A stretch of 64,000 bases of DNA from Gracilinanus agilis (Eukaryota), in assembly GCF_016433145.1 (NCBI RefSeq), contig NC_058133.1, forward strand, positions 261,563,836 to 261,627,835, given 5' to 3'. The notes beneath the pieces are model-generated. The model did not search any database. It was not told the DNA's origin and saw nothing but the letters and a program-made list of their open reading frames with translations. The position numbers were made by a program, and so were the translations under genes. Positions within the stretch are counted from its first letter, which is position 1. The number at the start of each line of letters is the position of its first letter. Shown here piece by piece: positions 3,611 through 54,960 of this stretch.

Positions 3611-3965
3611 AGTTAGAAGCAAAGCTGGGATTTAAACCTAGGCCTGTTTACTCTGGACCACTGTAGAGGAATCTCTCCCTCCTCCTGACCCGATCCTCTA
3701 ATGCCTTTCCTCACATAGAGAAGTTTGGAGCAGGGTTTTTTGAAAGTCTGTCATGTATAAGAGAGATTCAATTTATTTGACTCCAGAGAGCAGAAACCAG
3801 GAGTGATGAGTGGAAGTAACAAAAGAGAAAATTTACACTTGATGTCAAGAAAATTTTCTTAATCAATGGAGCTGCCCTGAAGTAGAATGGGCTGCCTCAA
3901 GTGGTGATGGACTGTCCCTCTTTTAGCTCCTCTTTTTTTTAGCCCCCCTTTTTTATTTTTAAAGC

Positions 3966-4175
3966 TAGCATTTGTATAACACTTTAAGAGAGCTTTACAA
4001 TTATTATCTCATTTGATCCTTACAACAACCCAGGGAGCTAGGTGCTAGTTATTATTATCCCTATTTTGCAGATGAGGAAAATTGAGGTCAACAGAGCCTA
4101 AGTGATTTGCCCCAAAACACGCAGCTAGTAAGCAATGAAGGCAGGATTTGAATTTGGGTCTCCCTGACTCTAGAA
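3966..4175 (-). mobile_element. MIR-type SINE (representative of many decayed MIR/MIR3 copies)
   Basis: It contains ctcatttgatccttacaacaacc..attttgcagatgaggaaa.tgagg..aagtgatttgccc... Confidence 0.8.
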
Positions 4176-4356
4176 CTTGTTCAGACAGATGCTGGATGAC
4201 CAACTAGCTATAGGGGTTGTTATAGTAGCGATCCTTCTGGTGTATGGATTAAACTAGATTGTCAGAAGACCCCGTGATCTTTCCTACAATTCTGTGGTTC
4301 TGCGATTTTTGCTGGAGGGAGGGGAGAAAGCCCCTTGAGGAAAAGGTCAATGATGA

Positions 4357-4605
<249 letters not shown>

Positions 4606-5026
4606 TGAGCAAGGAATAGAGTTTCTGTCCAGGGATTAGATGACAAGCAGAGCTGGAGAATGATGGGAATCAGGAACGTGGGGGCAGCCGGGATAGAATA
4701 GTTGTGAGAGGGAAGTATTAAGGTTTGGAGTGAGCAGGGAATATTGGGATTGTGGCTCAATAAAGAGTTTCACAGATGGGGAGGGGGACACATAGATGTG
4801 AGAGCAGACAATGAGAGTGAAGGAATGTGGGACCCAAAAGGAGGGGGGCCAGGGGATAGAGATCTGGTTCAAAGCTGGGCAGATTTGCTTTGTTATAGGG
4901 TCAAAGCTTTGTCTAAAGTCCTAATTTTCTTTTGCAACTGAATAAAATCTGTGTATACAGAAAAAACAATCATGGAATTATGGAATATTGAGAGCCTGGC
5001 AGAGAAGGATTCCAGGCAAGATCTAG

Positions 5027-5242
<216 letters not shown>

Positions 5243-6019
5243 CTGTCTCTCTCCATCCCTCATCAGCCCACCTCATGCCTTTCCCCTCTACCTCTCCCAG
5301 CCTCCTTTCTCCTTCCATCCAAACCCTTCATCCCTTGACAACCCTCTTCCATCTTCTATCCTTTCCAATCCACTCTCTTCCACAGTCAACACATTCCTCT
5401 TCCTGCCCCAGCTCCATAGAGTTCCAGACATATTTTCCAATCAAGCTTTTATTTTTTTAAAAGTCGTCTTGGGAAGAAAAAAAATAGAACAAAAAAATAG
5501 AAAAACAAAGAAAAACCAGAAACAAGCATTTGCAATAGCACCATAGAGTGGGGGCAGGGAAGGGGTAGGTAGGGTTGGGGAAGTGATCCTCCCGCAGGTG
5601 CGGGGCCGCAGCCTCGGCCAGCAGCGTTGGCAAGGGCTCTTGGTCTTCAGATCCCACCAAAGAGGTCTGTTTCTCTGTGCCCTTCAGAAGTCTCCCAAGA
5701 CCCCCTCCTCCAGAATTCCTGACCTTTCTTCATCTACATGCCTCAGGCTGGCTCCCAGAATGGCAGAGCTGGAAGGGACCTGACAGACTGGCTAGTCTAG
5801 ACTCTCCACCCTCCCACCCCGCCCCCATCCCCATCTTACAGAGGAAGAAACTGAAGCTTGGAAAGGGAAAATGAATGGTCTCGAGTCATGTTGCAGGGGA
5901 GCAGCAGACAAGAGTTCAGGACTCCTGATTCCTCAGGCCAGGGCTTTCTCTCCTAGCTCACGCTAATCCCTGAGGACTGCTGTTCCTATCTGGTCCTCCC
6001 TACCCCTTCTAGAGGGGCC

Positions 6020-6165
6020 CTATCTCTCTCTCTCTCTCTCTGTTTTTCTCCATGTATATGTGAGTCTGTCTTTATCTCTCTGTCTCTGTCTCATCTCTCT
6101 GTGTCACTGTCTAGCTCTCTGCCTCTGTCTCCTTTCTCTGTCTCTCCTCTGTCTCTGTCTCTTTC

Positions 6166-6196
<31 letters not shown>

Positions 6197-6560
6197 CTTT
6201 GTCTCTGTCCCTGTCTCTTCTTTCTCTTACTCTGTCTCTCTGTTTCTGTGTCTCTGTCTAGCTCTCTGCCTCTGTCTTCTTCCTGTCTCTCTCTCTGTGT
6301 GTATCTGTCTCTGATTCTGTCTCTCTGTCTTTGCCTCTCTGTCTCTGCCTCTGTCTGTGTGTGTGTTTGTCTTTGTTTCTCTGCCTCTCTGTATTTCTGT
6401 GTCTCTGTCTCTCCTTCCTCTTTCTCTGCCTCTCCTCTGTCTGTTTCTCTTACTCTGTGTCTCTGTCTTTCTGTTTCTGTGTCTTTGTCTAGCTCTCTGT
6501 CTCTCATCTCTTTTTCTGCTTCTCTTACTCCATCTCTCTCTTTCTGTTCTGTTTCTTCCT
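6020..6560. repeat. Complex (TC/TG/TCTG)n low-complexity tract
   Basis: Directly visible. The internal block tctgtgtc.ctgtctagctctctg recurs three times. Confidence 0.92.
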
Positions 6561-6845
6561 CTCCAAAAGGATAGCCCACCCCTCCCTTCCATGCTCCCTG
6601 TCTCTCTGCAAAGAATTGCTATCTGAAGGAGGGGGACGTCTTTCACATTCTAAGTCTTCCACTGGGCTTCTTGAGGTCTTCCTGTTTTCCCACACTCATT
6701 TCTTGTGCTCCTCCATTTCCTCTTCTGGTGGCCATGGAAAAGGTGAGGAAGAAGGAGATGCAGGTGAAAGGATGGAGACAGGATGGGCTCCTTCCCTTCA
6801 AGCTGGGATGGATGGGAGATAGTAGCTCCCACAGAGTAGTTTCAG

Positions 6846-6924
6846 GGGACTGAAGGCCAAGGGGGTGCATGTTCAGTCATGCTATGATTATGTTGAGCAG
6901 GAGCTCAGTTTCAAGGCAGGTTTG
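6846..6924 (+). pseudogene. Decayed partial copy of the 3' end of the PACSIN1 SH3 exon, including its splice donor
   Basis: 6856-6924 aligns by hand to 4507-4584 at 58/69 identities plus one 9-nt deletion. It reads AKGVHVQSCYDYVEQELSFKA-G|gtttg, against [25 protein letters not shown]|gtttg for the real exon. Confidence 0.88.
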
Positions 6925-9900
6925 GCCTCACTTACTTGCAGCAGTTAGAGTTTGGAGGTGGCCTGAGCATCTCCTGACTTTGGCTCACCCTGCCCTAGGG
7001 CCTTTGGGGGGCAGAGGGAATGGTCTTCTGGCTGAGTCACTGAGCTCGGCCCCATGTTTTGGGAAGTACTATAGGAGATGGGAATCCTGGTGCAGAGCTC
7101 AGCTGGGATCGTCACAGTTATACAATGCCTACTCTTTTTCCCATCCCTAAACCAGGGTTAGGGGAGCTGAAGGTGAGCTCCAGGTTGGTGGGTGGCCTTT
7201 CCCAGAGATTCATCCTCTTAGCATCTCTCTATGGCAGGGAGGGGTGGGTAATTGTCTCAGGGCAGCCATATTACCCTAGTTGTGGTTGCTGACCTCCATG
7301 GAAGGGGTTATCCCTCCAAATATATGCACACAAAGGTGCCCCCCCCCCGCCAGGAAACACTTGCTGCTTGGCTTCTAGGACTCTGAAATTCTGAAAGGGT
7401 CTGGCACCTTGCAGAGAAAATCAGAAACAGCAGTTCCCTTTGTCATAGAGAGTAGAGAAAAACACTATTTTGTCATGTTTAACATTTGGAATCCAAGGAG
7501 GGAGGCCCCTACCTCTTCCTCTATTTCTAGATATACCATGTGGACCCCGTTGTTCTTCTCTACTTCTGTTCATCTTCCCCTCCCCCTTCCCTTTCCCACC
7601 CTGGGGCAGGCACTGTGGGGATTCTGTTCCTAAGAGCCTGTGTGAGTGTATGGTTGAGAGCCATCCCTTGAGATCTTGGGTCTGGGGACCAGTTACTGGC
7701 AAGGGAGAAGAAGAGGAATTCCCATGGTGAGGGCAATGATTTTGTTCCTCTTGACCCACCTACCTCCATTCAAAATTCTAAGGTTAAACTTCTGTCCATC
7801 CTCCCCTTTCATCCTCAAGAGAGCTATTCTTAGAGAAACTGAGGTCACTCCCTACCCCCAACTCTAATGGACAGGACTCCATATGATTCCCAAAACACTT
7901 AGGAGGAAAACTGGACAGGGGAAGAGCAGCCTTTGTTCTTTAGAAGGTGGGAGCCCTGACACTTCAGCAAGGTGACTATTGCCTTTGTCAATACAGTAGT
8001 CCAACATCCCAGGAGTCTTCTTTTCTCCTTGATTCCTTCATCTTCACTTTGTCAAAGAAGTGGTGAGTTTGTTTCTACTGCCCTTCTCTCCCCACCTTCT
8101 TGGTCTGGGCAGGCTTGGACCATGGCCAGATGAGCTCAGAAGGTCTGGGGTAAATGGCTGATGGTCCCTACAGAGATGGAAGAATTTCCTGCTAAGGAAA
8201 GGTAGGAGATACTAAAGATAGAGGCTTCAAGGTCTTCACCTCCTCCTATCTGGACAACTGCAGGGGAGCCTGGAGGTAAACTTTATCCAAGCCAAAGGTC
8301 ATCAGCCTTGGAATAGAATGAGAGAAGATTCCACAGAACCTTCCCGGCCCCCATCCAGAGCATCCCCTCCCTACTGGAGTGTGTTGGGGTCCAGTAGCAG
8401 GGAGTGGTGTTGATGAAGGGTGCCTGGTGACCCATGAAGCTTTAGGGTCCCATGGCTGGGTCTCTCTGTGAAGCTAATGCCAATGGATGGCCATGCAGCA
8501 CCAGGTGAGACTTGATCTTAGCAGCTTTCCATCCCAGTCCTTAGAAATCTTCAGCCCTCCTCCTCGAGCATGTTAAACAGAAGTCCATTCTGCCAGCATC
8601 AAGATCCTTTATTTCTTAATCTGATCACCCCTCCCCCTTACCCTTTTATTGCTGCTAAAGCAGATGGAGGTCTGAGCCAGTGGGAACTGTGGAAGTGGAC
8701 TTTGAAGCTGAGGCCATGGACAAGCATCCCTTATCAGCCAGGGTCACAAAGAACCCCCAGAGAGAGTTCTTGAGTATTTTTTTTTGCCTCTGGATACCTT
8801 GACTATCATTTTCCTAGAACCCATCCTGAAGCTTTAACTCCCAGACTCTTTGAGCCCTTGATGCCCAGTGGCAGTCTTCTCAGAGGGACCTAATTGGAGT
8901 CTGACCTTTCCCTTGGGTCAAAGGCAGCCACCTGTTAGGTGCACTGCCCCTCTCCAGCTTTCCCCCACATCCACACATCTTCTCTTCCCACTTTTCTCCT
9001 CGCTACTGATTTCAGCTTTAGACTTCCACTCTAATCTGAGGTGGTCTGCAAAACTCAAAGCATCCTTTCGGGAAATTTTCGGTCAACATTGCACACACTT
9101 CCCATCTTCATCCCATCTGGACAGGCAGAAAGGGCCCAAGATTCNNNNNNNNNNNNNNNNNNNNNNNNNNNNNNNNNNNNNNNNNNNNNNNNNNNNNNNN
9201 NNNNNNNNNNNNNNNNNNNNNNNNNNNNNNNNNNNNNNNNNNNNNNNNNNNNNNNNNNNNNNNNNNNNNNNNNNNNGCCCAAAAGCAACTCTCTTCTCCA
9301 GGTTAGTCCTAAAGCCAATTAGGACAGTGGGACTCTGCCTCTTGTTTCCTCCTCTCCTCCCCTCCTTATATCCAATATTCCCTAGTCCATCCTTGTGGAA
9401 ACGCTGGCATACTTCTGCATCTTAGGACATGGACACCACTCTCTCTTACCGACAGGCCCAGAGACTTCTCTCTAGTTAGGGAAGGGAAGGGATTGCTGTT
9501 TACCCAATCTCTAAGTCTCCTTTGTCTTTCTGCTCTGGACTCCAACCTCTCCATGCCCTCAAGTCTTGCCCAGGGAATTGTTTGGGGAGCCTCCATCCCT
9601 TTTGACTGCTGAGAAGTTCTCATTCCCACACTGTCCTAAAAGAGCTACTACGTTGGCTTTCCCTCTGGCTTTTCTGGGACTTTGGGACTAGTTTCCACCC
9701 TGGACTTGCCTAGGCTAAAGGAGTATCTGCTAGGAAATGGGAGAAGACCAGTGGTGTTTTTCTATGGCTCCATAATAGACACAGCCCCATTCCTCCATTG
9801 CTGTCCATCCCCACTCTCACCCTACAACACACACACACATAAAAACACAAACAAACATATAAACTGTGATTGACTGAATTCAAACCATAAGCCTGTTGCT

Positions 9901-11924
9901 GTCCCTTGGATTTTATCTCAATTTGAATATCCTACACTCCTGGGGTCCCAGAAACCTCCTGAGATTTTCCTTCAGAGTCTGTTTCCAATCATGGACAAGC
10001 CCATGGAGAGACAAGGTGGTGCTGTAGAAAAGGTGCTGGCCGGGGGAGTTAGGTAACTAGTTCTTGTCTCATTTTCTGCCAAGAATTTGCTTAGCATCCT
10101 CAGGCAAGTTATTTCTCTCTGGATATCAGTTTCCTCTCTTGGAAAAGGAGAGGGTCAGACTGGTGGGTCCCTTCCAGCTTTACCATCCTATCATTTCAAG
10201 GACCAACAGAGGCCATTAGACCCATAGGAAGTGCCCAGCATCATCATGAGGAGGTGGTCAGACTTAGTGGCACCTTACCTGACAGCTGTCTTCAAGTGTC
10301 CAAAGAGCTGTCATTTGGAAAAGGAATTCAACTTGCTCTGCTTGGTCCCAAGAGGGAACAAAGAATAACGGATGGAAGTTAGAGAGGGATATTTTTTAGC
10401 TCAATAAAAGGCATAAACTTCTCATCAATTAGGTCTGCCCTAGAGTGAAATTGGGCTGCCGGAGGAGGTAGTGAGTTCCCTCCCACTGTAAGTGTTCAAG
10501 CTGAGATGAAATGACCCCTTATGGAAGATATCATATAGGGGGTGGTTTATTCAGGCAGGAATAGAACTAGAAGATCTCTGAAACCTCTACTAACTCTGAG
10601 ACTATAGTTCTGAGATTCCCAGGGACTAAGTGTGATTGGGAAAAAGTCTCAGAGGAAATAGAGGGACAGAGAGGTCAAGACCTGGACACAGACAAGGCCA
10701 GGGATGGGGACTGTGAGGTGGAAGTTTGGTAGGCTGCCTTCCCAAGGCCTGGAAATTGTCTTCATCCAGCTATAATCCTATTCTCTGGGCTCTTTAGCTG
10801 CCTATCCTACCAGTCGTGACTATGAGGACATCTTGGTCACCTCCCTTCCCTGTCCAGTTCCCAACACCTGTGCCACAGGTTCTTCCCTTAACTCCCTGCT
10901 CCTCCCTCCCCAACTCAAGGAAAATGATCACAGGGACATAGCCAGGGCTAAAGAGATAGATTAGGACTCAGCATTGGCTGTAATCCCAGGCTGCTACTTA
11001 TGACATTAGTAGCTTTGGGTGAGTTATTTCTTCTCTCTAGGCTCAGTTTCCTCCCTTGTAAAATGGGAGATGGGGAAGGGTTGACTCATTGTTTTGGATT
11101 TCATTGCCTTTCTCAACTTACTCCAGAGTGGCCAGGAAAGCTCGACGTCCATGACCTGGCTGAAATTGTTTCTTATGGCAATAGTTCTCCAAATAGTGAT
11201 GTGCCTGGGGATGTTTCTGTACCTTTGAGAGCACCCTTCCCAGCGAAAGCCCCAGGGACAGGAGCAAAGAAGGTGGAGGGGTGGAGTTAAGGCGAGAAAG
11301 GGAAACTACATCCAGAATTATGGTTTCCCTTGGACAAGTCAAGAAGAGTAGACACAGTCCTTTGACCAAGATAAAGTACTAATTCTGAAAGAGTCTGGTT
11401 CTACAACTCAGTGATATTCCCTCTGAGGGCCATTGTCATCCTCTTTACCCCCTTGCATGGGTGAACAGAGGCTACAGAATGAGATTCAGAGGCCCTGGCT
11501 TCAATCACCCTAAAAAGAATCCCAGGTCAGCCTCCAAATTGGTGAGGAGGAGTTGGTTAGGGAAGAGTCCTTCCACATGAATTAGAAATTCACTGGAACA
11601 AACAGGATTCCAAGTTGTCTGGTTCTGGGAGAAAACTGGCGACCCGATGTATATTACCATCCTTCCCTCTCTTCCCTTGTCCCATCTGCCACTAAACCTC
11701 TGAAGAATGTTCTCTTCATGGTCAACTCTGAGGTCCTAGAATGGGGCCTGGCGAGCAGATACAGTGACACGAGGCCATCCCATTGCTGTTTCATCATAGT
11801 CTGAGTTTGCATCTTTGTCCAACCTGCCTGTTCCCTCTCCCCTCTCTGTCCAACAGATATAATAGAGGGGAAGGACCCCAGGTCCCAATCAGACCCCCTG
11901 ATCCCTTGATAACCCCCCAAATCT

Positions 11925-11953
11925 ATGAATAAAGACAAAACTATTTTATTCAT
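11925..11953. terminator. Back-to-back AATAAA signals on both strands within a 9-bp inverted repeat
   Basis: The sequence is atgAATAAA (11925-11933), an 11-nt spacer, then TTTATTcat (11945-11953). GU/U-rich sequence follows on each strand. Confidence 0.4.
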
Positions 11954-13663
11954 GTATATGAGCTTGGTTTTTGGTGGGACCCTGGAAATGAGGGGGTGGA
12001 GAAGGTCCTTTTTGAAGAGTTGAGGCATGGGCCCAGGGTTTGGGAGCTCGAGTAGGCACTGGGGAAATGAAGGAATAGATCTGGGGGTGGGGATAGGGGA
12101 GGCAGAGGGGGAAGAGCCCAGTTTGCTGACATAATACAAGTTTCACTTATAGGTTCTTCTCAGGGTTGCCGAGGGGACCAAGGCTGGAAATCAAGTTTGT
12201 GAGATAGTCTCCTGTACTCCTGTGTGTCTGGAAGTATATGCTATACTTGCCCCCCCATCATCACACCTCCCATTCAATTCCTGTTCCTCCCACTTCCTGC
12301 AGCTCCCATCCCCATCCTGATGCCCTCCTCTTTCTAGCCCATCTGATCCTCCTTCCTTTTTCATTGACTCTTCTCTCCCTCAGATCCCTGACAGCTTTTC
12401 TACCTCAATGTTCTTCTCAGCCCTGGGTCTGAGGAAGGGGGCCAGGGTCAAGGAAAGGGGGAGAATCACCTGGAACTCCTGTTGGGGACAGAGCCAGGGA
12501 TGCTGTAGATAGGCCCTAGAGGGAATGGGAGTAGACAAAGAAAACCAGTTGCGCAAACCAGGTGCTAAGGGGGGAAGAAAGGGGAGGAATCAGACAGGAC
12601 AGGTTGGGACAGCAGGGACCTACCTGTATTGGCTGCTAAGGTCCCTTCCAACTCTTAAATGTGCGATTCTGTAATTGGGAGAGGCCAGAGGCACAGAGAC
12701 AGAAGCAACCCCTCTGTTGGAGCCATTCAGATGGCACAGAAGATGCCAGCAATCTGTTTGCTCACCCTCGGAAGTAAACTTTTCCCTTGGCAATAAAACT
12801 GCTGGGGGTAGAAAAGGACTATCCAGAAACTGGGGTTAACCCTCAGTACTCTGAGGCTCACTTTGGCTCCTACTCCATTTCTTAATTTGGAACTCAAGGG
12901 ACTTGGGTTCAGATCTTGGTCTAGTTCAGGCCACTTTGTCAGCTTTGGTAAATCTCAGAATCTCTTTGGGCCTCAATTCCCTCACCTTAATAGTGCAGGA
13001 ATTGGATTCTGTGACTTTGGAGGCTCCCAGCTGATGATCCTCAGATTCTTTGGGGGGACAGGAAGAGGAAGGAGCCAGTTTCCCTTAGACAAGCAGGTTG
13101 CCATGAGGCTGAGAGTCCTAGACCTTCTCATGAATACTCACAGCTATTTCCACCTGTCACCTCCTCACTCACAAGCACATACTCACACCTCATCAGCTGG
13201 CACAAGTACTGCCACCCTCACAAGTCTGCAAATAGACACATTCACAGAAACACTCCTGATGGGATGCGGAATCTCGAGGTCTGCTCACAAAGGAAATAAA
13301 CAGCTAATCTCTGTAGGGCTGGGGGTGGGATCCAGGACAATCCCACTGACCTGAGCTCAGCTCTAGCCCCACTGCCCTCCCTGCAGAGGCTCCATCAAGA
13401 AAGNNNNNNNNNNNNNNNNNNNNNNNNNNNNNNNNNNNNNNNNNNNNNNNNNNNNNNNNNNNNNNNNNNNNNNNNNNNNNNNNNNNNNNNNNNNNNNNNN
13501 NNNNNNNNNNNNNNNNNNNNNNNNNNNNNNNNNNNNNNNNNNNNNNNNNNNNNNNNNNNNNNNNNNNNNNNNNNNNNNNNNNNNNNNTCCTAGAGCCAGG
13601 AAAGGACTGGGGAATCATATCTCTTCCCTAACTCCCACTCTAGATATTCTCCCAAAGGCTTTC

Positions 13664-14047: not shown

Positions 14048-14240
14048 CAGTGGTTCCCAAACTTTTTTGGCCTACCGCCCCCTTTCCAGAAAAAATATTA
14101 CTTAGCCCCCTGGAAATTAATTTTTCTTAAATTTTAATAGCAATTAATAGGAAAGATAAATGCACCTGTGGCCATCACCATTTTCCTGGATCGCTGCAGC
14201 ACCCACCAGGGGGCAGTGGCATCCACTTGGTGAATCACTG
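14048..14240 (+). mobile_element. hAT (Charlie-type) MITE, 193 bp
   Basis: The termini are cagtggttcccaaa ... tgaatcactg. A perfect 8-bp TSD, aactaaac, lies at 14040-14047 and 14241-14248. Confidence 0.9.
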
Positions 14241-39110: not shown

Positions 39111-39384
39111 CCAAGTTTCCTTTCACCCTTGTGACTTGAGTTTATGGGCTCGGTGATTATGAGACTGACTTTTTTTTATGAGTACTACTTGACAGAGAAT
39201 GAGGCTTCCACCCTGGGTACCCATCAAGGGATATGTGTCGGGAGGGACATGGGCAAAGCTCGGTGAGAAATCCTCCTCCCTCTCCCACATTTCCAGCACT
39301 CTGAGGCTTTTTCTGGCTTCAGTGACTGAGAGTTTCTCTCTCCTGCCCCGACACCCAGCCTCCCCATGCGTCCCAGCGGCCCAC

Positions 39385-39805
39385 CTGCAGTGATGTTGAG
39401 CAGCTTGCAGGCAGTCTCAATGTCCTTCAGCACCTCCCCGACCACCATGGACTGTACTTGCTCTAATGAGTGCTCCTCCAGGGTCAGGTTACCTGGGGGG
39501 TAGTCTAGACCAGCCCCCTGGGCCTGGCTGTCGATGATGGGGCACTGCTCTGGCTCCTTGGGGGCCTCTTCACGGCCCCCATCGACAGGATCCTTCCCCG
39601 CCCAGGTTCCCTCTTCAGGGTATAGCATATCGAAGTAGGAGAGGTAGAAGGCCGACAAGCCCTGCTCAGGGGTGGCGGGCGGGCTGGGGCTCCAGCCTCT
39701 CCTCTCGGCCCCCGACCCCTTTTCCAGGCCGGTCCTTAGCCCCGTGTCAGGCAAGAGGTGGCGGGTTGGCGGTGGGGCGCTCAGGCCGGGGCTGGCGCTG
39801 CCCAT
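39385..39805 (-). CDS. SPDEF: SPDEF first coding exon (N-terminal 140 codons + 1 nt)
   Basis: The ATG is at 39805-39803. It reads MGSASPGLS...PEQGLSAFYLSYFDML...LEEHSLEQVQSMVVGEVLKDIETACKLLNITA, and the donor is G|GTGGG at 39384. An upstream acceptor (ctccacAG, 39833-39832) gives a 26-nt 5' UTR portion (39831-39806). Confidence 0.96.
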
Positions 39806-40130: not shown

Positions 40131-40735
40131 ATGCTGATTGGAGAAGGACAAGCTCTGCACATTTTAAAGGGTGCTGAACTCTCGAGTCTTTGCCTCCGGA
40201 GGGGGACACATGAACAACTACCATAACAGGAATAATAAGGAGGGCGGACAATCATATATTGCTTAATATAAATTAATCAATGGTGTTGCTTAATAAAATT
40301 GCTTCAACAAAGTCATTTACAGACATGACCTCATTGGATCCTCACAATAGCCTGTGATGCAGGAAGTGCTACAATCATTCTCAGGTGAGGGCTGAGGAAA
40401 CTTAAGACTCAGAAAAATGAAGAAAATTGCCAAGGTGAGTGGCAGAGGCAGTTCTCCCGGCTCCCGGTGGATAGATCCTCACTCTTACTCTTTACAGACA
40501 CCAGGCTGCCTTCAAGACAGATTTCCCCATGAATCAGGAACTAGAGGGCATGGATTTGAATTCAGTTCTGCTCCTTACTCTTGGTGACCTTGGGCAAGTC
40601 ACTCTTAATATTATTAATATTAACAACATTTATATATTACAATTAATGTAATTTATTAATGACATGTAAATGATAATTAATGATATTAATAACAATAATG
40701 TCATTTGTAAAAAGAAAGGCTTCAGAAACACTGTC

Positions 40736-40864
40736 TCCCTCCTGACCCCCAACCAGGCACCCAGCCTCACCACAATCCACTCATCCCAACCTCTGACTAG
40801 CAATGATATCGAGCAGCTTGCAGGAAGCCTTAATGTCCTTTAGCACCTCCCCAACCACCATGGA
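40736..40864 (-). pseudogene. Decayed partial copy of the 3' end of the SPDEF first coding exon, with adjacent intron flank
   Basis: 40800-40864 matches 39387-39451 at 57/65 with no gaps. It reads SMVVGEVLKDIKASCKLLDIIA against SMVVGEVLKDIETACKLLNITA. The intron words cacccagcctc and cc(a/c)acct are also shared. Confidence 0.92.
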
Positions 40865-41183: not shown

Positions 41184-41366
41184 AAGAAACAGTATTGTCC
41201 ATCCTTCTGCCATCAAGAAACAGTATTGTCTGTCCTTCTGCCAATAAGAAACAGTATTGTCCGTCCTTCTGCCAATAAGAAATAGCATTGTCTGTCCTTC
41301 TGCCAATAAGAAACAGTATTGTCCATCCTTCTTCCATTAAGAAATAGTATTGTCCATCCTTTTGCC
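41184..41366. repeat. 31-bp minisatellite, 6 copies
   Basis: The unit aagaaacagtattgtccatccttctgcca(tc/at) starts at 41184, 41215, 41246, 41277, 41308 and 41339. Confidence 0.93.
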
Positions 41367-47817: not shown

Positions 47818-48991
47818 CTGGGGTTCTTAGTCCTTAGAGTCTGAAATTAGTCTTTTGGTTGGTTGGTTGGTTTTTTTTAATAATTGTAACCCAAAAGTCT
47901 CAGTGCAGTTTTAAGCAATATAAATAGATATTTATATATGATATTTGGGGAGGTGGCATAGTGGATAAAGAATTAAGTTTGGAATCAGGAAGATTCATCT
48001 TCATCAGTTCAAATCCAGCCTTGGACCATTTTCTAGCTCCGTGACCCTGAGTAAGTCACTTTACCCTGGTTAGTTCAGGTCTTCATTTGTAAAATAAACT
48101 GGAAAAGGAAATGGCAAACCACTCCAGTATCTCTGCCAAGAATACCCCAAATGCGATCATGAAGAATTGAACTCAATTAAACAAGAACAACAAATGATAT
48201 CTAATTTACATAAGTATATAAAGTCATAAGTATATCGCTCATTTCTTTTGTGATCCTACATAGTTCGTTTTATGCACTGAAAAGCATTATTCTGGGTGCA
48301 GCTGGGTAGCTTAGTGGATTGAGAGTCAGGCCTAGACACGGGAGGTCCAAGGTTCAAATCCAGTCTCAGACACTTCCCAGCTGTGTGACCCTGGGCAAGT
48401 CACTTGACCCCCATTGCCCACCCTTACCACTCTTCCACATAGGAGCCAATACACAGAAGTTAAGGGTTTAAAAAAATAATAACAAAAAGAAGAAAAAAAA
48501 GGAAAGCATTATTCTGGCCACAGAATTAATACTGGAAGAAAAAATCGTGCATGTTATCTCCTGAGAAGGAACTGAAAGGTGAAAATTTGAAAGATTTAAG
48601 TTGTATGAACATGTCTCTCTCCCAAATGATACTTTAGCTGTGATATGGGAAGGGTAGAAAGGGGATGGGACATTTGAGGATAAATGCTATTAATAAATAC
48701 ATTAATTATTATTATTTTGCAAAAAGGAAGAGACTGGACTATCCAGAAGGAAAGCTTTGAACGTTTCATGTGGGATTTGTTATGTGGTTATGAAGCAAGC
48801 TAAACATCTAAGAGATTTGTGATTTCATTTATGTACAATCTTTTTTTGTACATGGAAATGCTTGGTTTATTCAGTTTTGTAAAATTTGGAATAAAAAAAC
48901 CAAAACCAAAAGTATTATTCTGAGAATAGATCCAGAGGTTTTACTAGACTGCCAAGGGGAGTCTGTGACACTAAAAAAATTCAGAACCCTT
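47818..48991. mobile_element. Old Charlie-type MITE split by nested MAR1 (~47948-48195), SINE1 (48296-48502) and L1 fragment (48517-48908)
   Basis: The ends are ctggggttctta.. and ..cagaaccctt. The MITE words aaagcattattctg|agaa..ccagactgccaa.. are continuous once the inserts are removed. An uninterrupted relative lies near 49800-49945. Confidence 0.7.
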
Positions 48992-50339
48992 ACTCTAATA
49001 CAACACACTCATTTTACAGATGGAAAGACAGACCTAGAAGAGAAGGACTTATCCAAGTTCACAGATCAAGCAAATGGCAGAGCTAGCACAAATCTATATT
49101 TAGCACCAGAGACCAATGCATCTGTCTTTAGACTATTCTCTCTCCAGACCCAATCCATCACTGGAAATGGCAAACTACTCCAGCATCTCTGCCAAAAACA
49201 CCCCAAATGAGATCATGAAGAATTGGACACAAATGAACAATGACACAAATTATATCTATTTTACATACATATATAAAATCATAAGTATATCACTCATTTC
49301 TTTTGTGATCCTATATATTTTACTTTATGCATTGAAAAGCATTATTCTGGCCACAGAATTAATATTGGAAGAAAAAATTACGAATGTTGCACAGAGGGAA
49401 AAGGGCACAGACTAAAATAGAGTGTTTGGTCACAATGAACTTTATGAATTCATAGATCCATTTTTTTTTCACCAACAGGTCAAAGGTAAGGAGACAGATT
49501 TCATCTTATCATGGAGACAAAGTTGCCTAGCAATCAGAATAAAGTGAAAAGGATTGTTTCAAAAGATAACAAGTTCCAGAGCAGCTTGGATAGAGTCAGT
49601 CCTGGAGGTGGGAGGTCTTGGATTAAAATCTGGCCTTTGATACCTTTTTGCTGTGTGACCCGGGACAAGTCACCTAACCTCAATTGTCTAGCCCTTACCA
49701 CTCTTCTGCCCTATGTATTGATTCTAAGATGGAATGTAAAGACTAAAAATTTAAAAAAAGGTAATGAGTTCCCCATCAACAGATACTTTCAAATAGGGCA
49801 GAGGTTTGCTAACTGTATTTCAATAAAATTGATTTCCTTTGTAATACTACATATTTTATTTTATGTACTTAAAAACATTATTCTGAGAAGGGGTCCACAA
49901 GTTTCAACAGACTGCCAAAGGGTGCCCATGACACAGAATCCCTGGGATTAGGATTAACATCTGGATGACCACTTCTCAGGGATATTCTGGAGATGATTCT
50001 TGTTTAGAAATGGATTTGTTTACAAATGAAGTCTCTTCTAGCTCTCAGATGATGAACTTCTAAGTTAGGAGGCAGCTCTCTTGGGAGCTTTTTCTCCAGA
50101 AAACTCCTTACTCTGGGTTGTTTTCTCTCTCCTTCCACAGTTTAGGACTCAGCTGAGGGATAGGCAAAGATTTAGGGCCTTGGCAAACAGCTGGAAGCTC
50201 GTGTACTCTTGGGGCCAGTGAGTAGGCTGGCTTGGGTTTCAGTTTCCTGGTTAGCAAGCCAGAACCTTGGAGAGAGCCGCAGGGTTGGGAGCAAGATCAG
50301 TGGGAAATTTTAGACCCTCCATGAGACTGGGCTCTTGTT

Positions 50340-54775: not shown

Positions 54776-54960
54776 CAGTGATTCCCAAAGTGGGCACCAC
54801 CGCTCCCCGGAGGGTGCTGCAGCGATCCAGGGGAGCTGGTGATGGCCACAGGTGCATTTATCTTTCCTATTAATTGCTATTAAAAAAAAAATTTCCAGGG
54901 GGCTAAGTAATATTTTTTCTGGAAAGGTGGCGGTAAGCCAAAAAAGTTTGGGAACCACTG
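54776..54960 (-). mobile_element. hAT MITE, same family as 14048-14240, opposite orientation
   Basis: The terminal inverted repeats (TIRs) cagtgattcccaaa / tttgggaaccactg match at 13/14. A perfect 8-bp TSD, ctctaaac, lies at 54768-54775 and 54961-54968. Confidence 0.92.

What the first reader, a model, noticed from the sequence alone, without database searches (positions are those of the whole stretch)
6846..6924. Decayed copy of the PACSIN1 SH3 exon end, with donor intact, downstream of the stop codon
Seen: 6856-6924 copies 4507-4584 (58/69 identical, one in-frame 9-nt deletion) and keeps the same GCAG|GTTTG donor. It reads AKGVHVQSCYDYVEQELSFKA. All three CpGs of the source have changed by transition (cgt>cat, cgg>cag, tacg>tatg), the signature of methylated neutral decay. 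An AG at 6844-6845 would define a 74-nt exon with the same phases (2 in, 1 out) as the real exon, but its pyrimidine tract is weak. Inference: this is a local genomic micro-duplication about 2.3 kb from its source, possibly inside the PACSIN1 3' UTR, where a live donor could cause cryptic 3'-UTR splicing.
Basis: partly seen in the sequence, partly recalled or inferred. Interest (0 to 1): 0.7.

Follow-up and report, generated by a model that had tools for sequence, protein, structure and literature searches.

The report
Dead copy of PACSIN1 exon end
About 1.6 kb after the stop codon of an opossum's PACSIN1 gene lies a real but decayed 80-base copy of the end of that gene's second-to-last coding exon, an ordinary leftover of a small local DNA duplication with no sign of any function.

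Summary
Window 6856-6928 (perhaps from 6852) is a same-strand copy of 4507-4588. That source is the last 73 nt of the penultimate PACSIN1 coding exon (4392-4579) plus 9 nt of its intron. The alignment scores about 20 SD above shuffles. There are 12 differences in 73 aligned bases and one 9-nt deletion. Homology stops abruptly on both sides, and there is no copy of the rest of the exon or of the last exon.

The copy carries intron bases, so it came from DNA or unspliced RNA, not from a retrocopy or a paralogue. It has decayed like neutral DNA. All three source CpGs were lost by transition. Seven of 11 exonic changes alter amino acids that are invariant in the real exon. The deletion sits between two GAG repeats.

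The "intact donor" is weak: 70 of 211 GT sites in the same region pair with U1 at least as well. The candidate acceptor has a poor pyrimidine tract. Location inside the 3' UTR is plausible but unproven. Partial exon copies of this kind are already catalogued in vertebrate genes. Low interest.

The parts
4392..4579 (+). Real penultimate coding exon of PACSIN1 (linker with two NPF motifs and the first half of the SH3 domain). Donor GT at 4580-4581.
   Evidence: Translation. The 62-aa exon matches PACSIN chains in the PDB. Its last 24 residues are identical to the PACSIN1 SH3 chain 2x3w_D (the chain's residues are printed; the match is listed).
4507..4588 (+). Source segment of the duplication: the last 73 nt of the exon plus the first 9 nt of the intron.
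   Evidence: Local alignment, blastn, repeat families D4 and D5.
5133..5242 (+). Last coding exon of PACSIN1 (second half of the SH3 domain), stop TAA at 5240-5242. It has no copy near the relic.
   Evidence: Translation. 34 of 34 residues are identical to the PACSIN1 SH3 chain 2x3w_D, a better match than PACSIN2 or PACSIN3. No second match.
6852..6928 (+). The relic: a decayed same-strand copy of 4501/4507-4588 (core 6856-6928). 12 substitutions in 73 aligned bases, a 9-nt deletion, no CpG left.
   Evidence: No extension of homology on either side. No flanking direct repeat.
6920..6925 (+). Retained donor-like motif GTTTGG after GCAG. Identical to the real donor at -3 to +5, T to G at +6.
   Evidence: U1 duplex energy is -6.9 against -7.5 kcal/mol for the real donor. 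70 of 211 GT sites nearby pair with U1 as well or better.
6844..6845 (+). AG that could act as an acceptor for a 74-nt pseudo-exon. The pyrimidine tract upstream is poor.
   Evidence: Pyrimidine fraction 0.52 against 0.88 (real exon) and 0.76 (last exon).

Best explanation
The stretch is an inert relic of a single small DNA-level duplication within the PACSIN1 locus of an opossum. About 82-88 nt spanning the end of the penultimate coding exon and the first 9 nt of its intron were copied in direct orientation to a site 2.35 kb downstream, 1.6 kb past the stop codon. Two routes give the same end product and cannot be told apart here. One is a templated (copy-paste) insertion during break repair or a replication template switch. 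The other is a 2.35-kb tandem duplication of 4501-6851 whose second unit was later deleted except for its first 82 nt.

Since then the copy has drifted without constraint, through methyl-CpG transitions, amino-acid-changing substitutions and a slippage deletion. It probably lies in the long 3' UTR of PACSIN1 (inferred, about 60% likely). It most likely does nothing there. Its donor-like motif is no better than many chance GT sites around it.

Shown: the copy, its limits, its DNA-level origin and its decay pattern. Inferred: the mechanism of copying, the 3' UTR location, and the lack of function.
For: The match is real. It scores about 20 SD above shuffles and is the only non-repeat hit of 3900-5900 elsewhere in the window.

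It crosses the exon-intron boundary, with 8 of 9 intron bases identical, so it was copied from unspliced sequence.

The limits are sharp. The remaining 115 nt of the constrained exon have no counterpart upstream of the relic, and nothing significant follows it (p 0.03 and 0.09, and the alignments are off register). No copy of the last exon exists.

Decay pattern:
- 3 of 3 CpGs lost by transition.
- 7 transitions and 5 transversions.
- 7 of 11 exonic changes are nonsynonymous, against a neutral expectation of 0.74.
- They replace A, L, R, R, D and G of the [10 protein letters not shown] stretch. The [23 protein letters not shown] stretch that contains it is 23 of 23 identical even in a distant vertebrate contig (L001).
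- The 9-nt deletion is flanked by GAG on both sides.

In a contig of a related organism C that runs collinear through the region, conserved patches at 6728-6771, 7183-7212 and 7519-7569 were laid. Nothing at or above 80% likeness was laid over the relic.

The donor is unexceptional and the acceptor tract is poor.

[quoted passage not shown] Thousands of unannotated exon-like targets are reported in human genes and their neighbourhoods (PMC9013439).
Against: No RNA data were available, so use of the donor or acceptor at some level is not excluded.

No orthologous sequence could be read, so neutrality rests on one pairwise comparison of 73 bases.

The reading frame of the copy is still open over 40 codons, although that is expected by chance for so short a stretch.

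Two of the handful of low-copy local duplicate pairs in this window involve exon-intron boundaries (PACSIN1 and SPDEF). That is more than a uniform model predicts. Slower decay of pairs with one constrained partner explains part of this.
Confidence: 0.85

Rival explanations
1. The relic is functional RNA sequence. It would be transcribed in the PACSIN1 3' UTR, and its kept donor (with a downstream acceptor), or the 74-nt pseudo-exon, would be spliced. That would create a 3'-UTR intron that marks the mRNA for nonsense-mediated decay, or a U1-binding site that affects 3' end processing.
For: CAG|GTTTG is kept at positions -3 to +5 while 12 of 73 bases changed. There is no canonical poly(A) signal between the stop and 10403, so the relic may be transcribed. 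The frame is open.
Against: 9 unchanged bases out of 73 at 16% divergence is not unusual. U1 pairing is 6 of 9, and 70 of 211 neighbouring GT sites match or beat it. The acceptor tract is only 0.52 pyrimidine. The relic was not among the patches conserved with organism C. No RNA evidence exists either way.
Confidence: 0.05
2. The insert was templated by nascent unspliced PACSIN1 pre-mRNA (RNA-templated break repair in cis) and not by DNA.
For: The copy is in the sense orientation, within the same transcription unit, and includes intron bases, as pre-mRNA would. A second exon-boundary copy exists in the neighbouring gene SPDEF.
Against: PACSIN1 is a neuronal gene (general knowledge, not tested here), so germline pre-mRNA would be scarce. 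Nothing in the sequence distinguishes an RNA template from a DNA template. There is no poly(A) tract and no target-site duplication.
Confidence: 0.05
3. The fragment comes from a paralogue (PACSIN2 or PACSIN3), from a processed retrocopy, or from another SH3 gene.
For: At the protein level the 23-aa relic peptide hits PACSIN1 and PACSIN3 SH3 almost equally (E 0.17 and 0.19).
Against: The match continues 9 nt into the local intron with 8 of 9 identical. AKGV before the SH3 core is the PACSIN1 form, not the PACSIN2 or PACSIN3 form. 84% DNA identity to the local exon is high.
Confidence: 0.02
4. Chance similarity or an assembly artefact.
For: None beyond the short length.
Against: The score is about 20 SD above shuffles. 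A mis-assembly would give a near-identical copy, not a CpG-depleted copy 16% diverged with an indel. A public run (X1) holds 0.90 of the sampled 31-letter words of 6570-7570, though it may be the assembly's own sample.
Confidence: 0.01

Closest known systems
Partial / inter-boundary / intronic exon duplicates (degenerate pseudo-exons) as catalogued by Exonize (PMC12343006) and by surveys of unannotated tandem exon duplications (PMC9013439, which cites the 2002 survey of common exon duplication in animals)
   Same: Same-gene, same-strand copy of part of a coding exon that crosses the exon-intron boundary. It lies in non-coding sequence of the gene or its neighbourhood and is degenerate.
   Different: It lies after the last coding exon, not in a neighbouring intron. 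It covers only about 40% of the exon. It has no partner copy of the next exon, so it cannot serve as a mutually exclusive or cassette exon.
Templated insertions from replication template switching or break repair (MMBIR-type MMB-TI, PMC8421209; polymerase-theta end joining)
   Same: A short stretch copied from a nearby template in cis into a new site with no transposon hallmarks.
   Different: The MMB-TI signature in that paper is short insertions (its test set used 20-50 bp) from inverse-complementary templates within 100 bp. Here the copy is about 82 nt, in direct orientation and 2.35 kb away. Junction microhomology cannot be judged without the empty site.
Other exon-fragment relics noted by this scan in the same opossum genome (PTPN6 exon fragment s1-153938; MYO1E exon-derived filler s1-153835; SPDEF exon end s1-181977)
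   Same: Small decayed copies of exon parts within a few hundred bases to a few kb of their source.
   Different: Those lie in introns; this one lies downstream of the stop codon. Only the SPDEF case was re-checked here.

Membership tests
Degenerate partial (inter-boundary) exon duplicate | Significant nucleotide similarity to a coding exon of the same gene on the same strand | tested here: met
   Score 66 against 19.3 +/- 2.3 for shuffles; blastn E 2.5e-8.
Degenerate partial (inter-boundary) exon duplicate | The match covers only part of the exon and extends across the exon-intron boundary | tested here: met
   73 of 188 exon nt plus 9 intron nt (8 of 9 identical). No match to the rest of the exon.
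Degenerate partial (inter-boundary) exon duplicate | The target lies outside real exons and outside dispersed repeats | tested here: met
   1.6 kb past the stop codon. No other in-window hits for 6561-9144. No credible ORF nearby. No Rfam hit. Gene annotation and a repeat library were not available.
Degenerate partial (inter-boundary) exon duplicate | Loss of coding constraint | tested here: met
   7 of 11 exonic changes are nonsynonymous (neutral expectation 0.74), there is a 3-codon deletion, and 3 of 3 CpGs are lost. The real peptide is invariant in a distant vertebrate.
Functional duplicated exon (mutually exclusive or cassette) | Full exon length with both splice sites competent | tested here: not met
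   About 40% of the exon is copied. Acceptor tract 0.52 pyrimidine. Donor 6 of 9 U1 pairs, not better than a third of nearby GT sites.
Functional duplicated exon (mutually exclusive or cassette) | Junction reads in RNA | not testable with these tools
   No listed run is on record as RNA. The single read-laying run returned only DNA-like contigs and unrelated pieces.
Processed retrocopy fragment | Lacks intron sequence; has a poly(A) tract and target-site duplication | tested here: not met
   Intron bases are present. No flanking direct repeat. No A tract next to the relic.
MMBIR-type templated insertion (MMB-TI signature) | Short insertion (the paper's test set used 20-50 bp), inverse-complementary template within 100 bp, microhomology at the junctions | tested here: not met
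   82 nt, direct orientation, template 2.35 kb away (against the definition read). Only a possible GAAG at the left junction.
PACSIN1 gene (identity of the source) | SH3 sequence of PACSIN1 and not PACSIN2 or PACSIN3; neighbour SPDEF | tested here: met
   Last exon 34 of 34 identical to 2x3w PACSIN1 SH3, E 3e-20 against 2e-16 (PACSIN2) and 8e-14 (PACSIN3). The SPDEF PNT exon lies at 39386-39451 on the minus strand. Adjacency of the two genes in other mammals is from memory.

The most novel reading that the evidence does not exclude
The relic is transcribed in the PACSIN1 3' UTR of opossums. Its inherited donor is spliced to a downstream acceptor in neurons. This would create a lineage-specific 3'-UTR intron that subjects part of the PACSIN1 mRNA to nonsense-mediated decay. 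A gene would then have acquired a new post-transcriptional control element by copying its own exon end.
Probability: 0.04. Interest if true: 0.4.

Novelty: new member of a known kind. Interest (0 to 1): 0.1.

Why it matters
It matters little on its own. It is one more example of the small exon-fragment copies that litter vertebrate genes. It is useful as a neutral marker for dating and for annotation hygiene, because gene finders and protein-to-genome aligners can mistake it for an SH3 exon. Together with the SPDEF copy in the same window and similar notes elsewhere in this genome, it suggests that a genome-wide census of such local exon-boundary copies in marsupials could measure how often short cis duplications arise. 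That census could also show whether exon boundaries are over-represented.

Tried and rejected
- **Larger duplication.** blastn with word 7 of 3900-5900 against the whole window and permissive local alignments of 300 nt on each side found nothing collinear. tblastn found no second copy of either exon peptide apart from the relic.
- **Target-site duplication or leftover of a tandem unit around the relic.** None found.
- **Structured RNA in 5200-10500.** No Rfam match at E up to 1.
- **Another gene around the relic.** Only low-complexity ORFs.
- **Reads.**
  - The look-up of sequencing runs found one strong holder (X1, 0.90 of words) and 19 small runs of organism B holding 0.09. None is on record as RNA.
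  - Read laying on 6560-9100 laid none of X1's holder contigs; its output states that a filter leaves some records out. It laid only unrelated purine-rich pieces from organism B.
  - A collinear contig of organism C is 97 nt shorter than the window between anchors 6771 and 7519. It is also shorter in every other interval (by 122, 4, 38 and 27 nt). Its length therefore says nothing about presence or absence of the relic.
  - The coding exons and the CT-rich repeat were deliberately left out of that single call.
- **Orthologues.**
  - The word search with the exon ORF returned many genomic exon ORFs from other species.
  - The one metagenome scan gave only distant vertebrate and invertebrate PACSIN-like contigs (best 72% identity). 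None was taken for human. L001 has no second copy in the 5.2 kb downstream of its exon.
- **Not done.**
  - N runs were left untouched.
  - I ran no further search on the 40-codon relic ORF. It has no start codon that would give a called gene of 30 aa or more.
- **Literature.** A search for PACSIN1 with Monodelphis and exon duplication found nothing on this relic.

Full report
**Observation**

The two stretches were read directly. A local alignment of 4300-4700 against 6700-7100 pairs 4507-4551 with 6856-6900 and 4561-4588 with 6901-6928. It may also pair GAAG at 4501-4504 with 6852-6855. The score is 66, against 19.3 +/- 2.3 (maximum 27) for 300 shuffles. The repeat finder reports the same two blocks as families D4 and D5.

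Over the 73 aligned bases there are 12 differences, 7 of them transitions. One 9-nt gap is present.
- 58 of 69 identical over 6856-6924.
- The peptide AKGVHVQSCYDYVEQELSFKA.
- Three CpGs changed by transition.
- AG at 6844-6845.
- A 74-nt interval with phases 2 in and 1 out.

**Gene context**

- The source is the 3' end of the exon 4392-4579, whose donor GT is at 4580-4581. The exon encodes [62 protein letters not shown].
- The next exon, 5133-5242, encodes the rest of the SH3 domain and ends in TAA at 5240-5242.
- The last exon is 34 of 34 identical to the solved PACSIN1 SH3 domain (2x3w). It matches PACSIN2 and PACSIN3 less well.
- The exon tail is identical to residues 1-24 of that PACSIN1 chain (its residues are printed; the match is listed).
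- SPDEF lies on the minus strand further along the window.

So the gene is PACSIN1, and the relic starts 1.6 kb after its stop codon.

**Extent and origin**

- A sensitive blastn of 3900-5900 against the whole window gives SINE-like multi-copy hits for 4036-4180. Besides those, the only notable hit is 4507-4588 to 6856-6928. Nothing else lies at the same offset.
- Permissive alignments of the 300 nt on either side are not significant and are out of register.
- The upstream 115 nt of the exon are as constrained as the copied part. They would still be recognisable if they had been copied, so the left limit in mid-exon is real.
- There is no copy of the last exon.
- The match continues 9 nt into the intron with 8 of 9 identical. 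The template was therefore unspliced: genomic DNA or, less likely, pre-mRNA. That excludes a processed retrocopy and makes a paralogue origin very unlikely.
- At the protein level the 23-aa relic peptide only finds PACSIN SH3 domains, PACSIN1 marginally first.
- No direct repeat flanks the insert, and no dispersed repeat carries it.
- The final structure fits two routes equally well. One is a direct copy-paste insertion of about 82 nt. The other is a tandem duplication of 4501-6851 followed by loss of all but the first 82 nt of the second unit. These cannot be separated without an empty site from another species.

**Decay**

- All three CpGs of the source are TpG or CpA in the copy, and the copy has no CpG.
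- Of 11 exonic differences, 7 change the amino acid. The expectation for random change in this sequence is 0.74.
- The changes hit R, R, A, L, D and G of the [10 protein letters not shown] stretch. The [23 protein letters not shown] stretch that contains it is 23 of 23 identical in a distant vertebrate contig (L001) and invariant across 17 other genomic exon ORFs.
- The 9-nt deletion lies between two GAG triplets, as replication slippage would leave it.
- The Jukes-Cantor distance is 0.186 (bootstrap 95% interval 0.09-0.32), or 0.148 without CpG sites.
- Suppose most change is on the relic's side and the neutral rate is near 2e-9 per site per year. That rate is an assumption from general mammalian values, not measured here. 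The event would then be tens of millions of years old, roughly 50-100 million years, with a wide margin.

**Splice potential**

- The relic keeps CAG|GTTTG and differs from the real donor only at +6.
- In register with the 5' end of U1 it pairs at 6 of 9 positions. Its duplex energy is -6.9 kcal/mol, against -7.5 for the real donor.
- Among the 211 GT dinucleotides in 5242-9140, 70 pair at least as well. Near-consensus sites occur at 6743, 7173 and 8505.
- The real donor is itself weak by sequence and presumably depends on its exon context. The relic has lost much of that context.
- The AG at 6844-6845 follows a tract that is only 52% pyrimidine.
- So "donor intact" is true but carries little weight.

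**Is it in the 3' UTR?**

- There is no AATAAA or ATTAAA between the stop and 10403. The variant hexamers before the relic sit in an A-rich run without a convincing downstream element.
- A 132-nt N run at 9145-9276 was left untouched.
- Region 4168-13403 has no dispersed repeat that recurs three or more times within the window, apart from a CT-rich microsatellite, while 19% of the whole window is such repeat. It is also richer in G+C (0.50 against 0.44).
- A contig of a related organism C lies collinear with 6728-8681 in conserved patches. One of these has a single mismatch in 44 bases, at 6728-6771.
- These points fit a long 3' UTR but do not prove it.
- No gene-like ORF and no Rfam family is present.

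**Reads**

- One public run (X1, organism A) holds 0.90 of the sampled words of 6570-7570. It may be the assembly's own sample.
- Nineteen small runs of organism B hold the same 0.09 share and are only guessed to be RNA.
- The single read-laying run laid none of the holder contigs of X1 or B; its output states that a filter leaves some records out.
- In organism C's contig nothing at or above 80% likeness lies over 6772-7182. The relic is therefore either absent there or as diverged as ordinary flank.
- The contig's shorter length in that interval is matched by shorter lengths in the other intervals. It is no evidence of absence.
- An assembly artefact is excluded independently by the 16% divergence and CpG depletion of the copy.

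**Comparison with what is known**

- Exonize classifies within-gene exon matches as full-length, partial, inter-boundary or intronic. It reports that many more vertebrate genes have the last three kinds than have full-exon duplications, which occur in 4-7% of genes (PMC12343006).
- A survey of tandem exon duplications found thousands of unannotated exon-like targets in human genes and their neighbourhoods, UTRs included (PMC9013439).
- The relic is an inter-boundary partial duplicate of that kind, sited after the last coding exon.
- It does not fit the published MMB-TI signature of short inverted templated insertions from within 100 bp (PMC8421209). The copying mechanism is therefore named only in general terms.

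**Wider pattern**

- A self-comparison of the window finds very few low-copy local pairs.
- One of them is a second exon-boundary copy. SPDEF exon end 39371-39451 (minus strand) is copied at 40784-40864, about 88% identical, with weaker gapped homology for about 100 nt into the intron. The AG before the GT is lost.
- Earlier notes of this scan report similar relics elsewhere in this genome. Apart from SPDEF these are unchecked leads.
- Pairs with one constrained partner stay detectable about twice as long, which explains part of the apparent excess.

**Limits**

- No contig taken for human was fetched or compared.

**Verdict**

This is an ordinary neutral duplication relic.

Noticed in passing
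window 40718-40864 (-) versus 39315-39451 (-): A second exon-boundary relic. The last ~65 nt of a SPDEF exon (..SMVVGEVLKDIETACKLLNITA; 15 of 15 residues identical to the SPDEF PNT-domain structure 2dkx) are copied 1.4 kb away in the upstream intron at about 88% identity. Weaker gapped homology runs about 100 nt into the intron. The copy's donor context changed from CAG|GT to CTA|GT.
   Followed up: partly
window 6728-6771: A 44-nt patch about 80 nt upstream of the relic differs by one base from a contig of a related organism C, while most of the surrounding sequence is below 80% likeness. It contains a near-consensus donor-like motif, AAG|GTGAGG, with its GT at 6743-6744. It may be a conserved 3' UTR element.
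   Followed up: no
window 6013-6560: A 550-nt CT-rich low-complexity block with a (TG)n core near 6170-6200 lies between the PACSIN1 stop codon and the relic.
   Followed up: no
window 4168-13403: About 9 kb around and after the PACSIN1 3' end has no dispersed repeat that recurs three or more times within the window, although 19% of the window is such repeat. There is no AATAAA or ATTAAA between the stop (5242) and 10403. An N run (9145-9276) sits in this zone and was left untouched.
   Followed up: partly
window 48503-48545 / 49336-49378 and 48908-48971 / 49871-49934: Two low-copy direct pairs (98% over 43 nt and 77% over 64 nt) at spacings of 833 and 963 nt. They may be remains of one local duplication in non-coding sequence.
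   Followed up: no
window 41184-41366: A tandem repeat with a 62-nt unit, about three copies, about 90% identical, close to the SPDEF relic.
   Followed up: no
window 14048-14240 versus 54776-54960 (inverted): A two-copy inverted pair, 194 nt at 88% identity, 40 kb apart. It is not part of the multi-copy SINE families of the window.
   Followed up: no
window 6570-7570 (runs X2-X20): Nineteen small public runs of another organism (B, 9 studies, guessed to be RNA) all hold the same 9% of the sampled 31-letter words of this stretch.
   Followed up: partly
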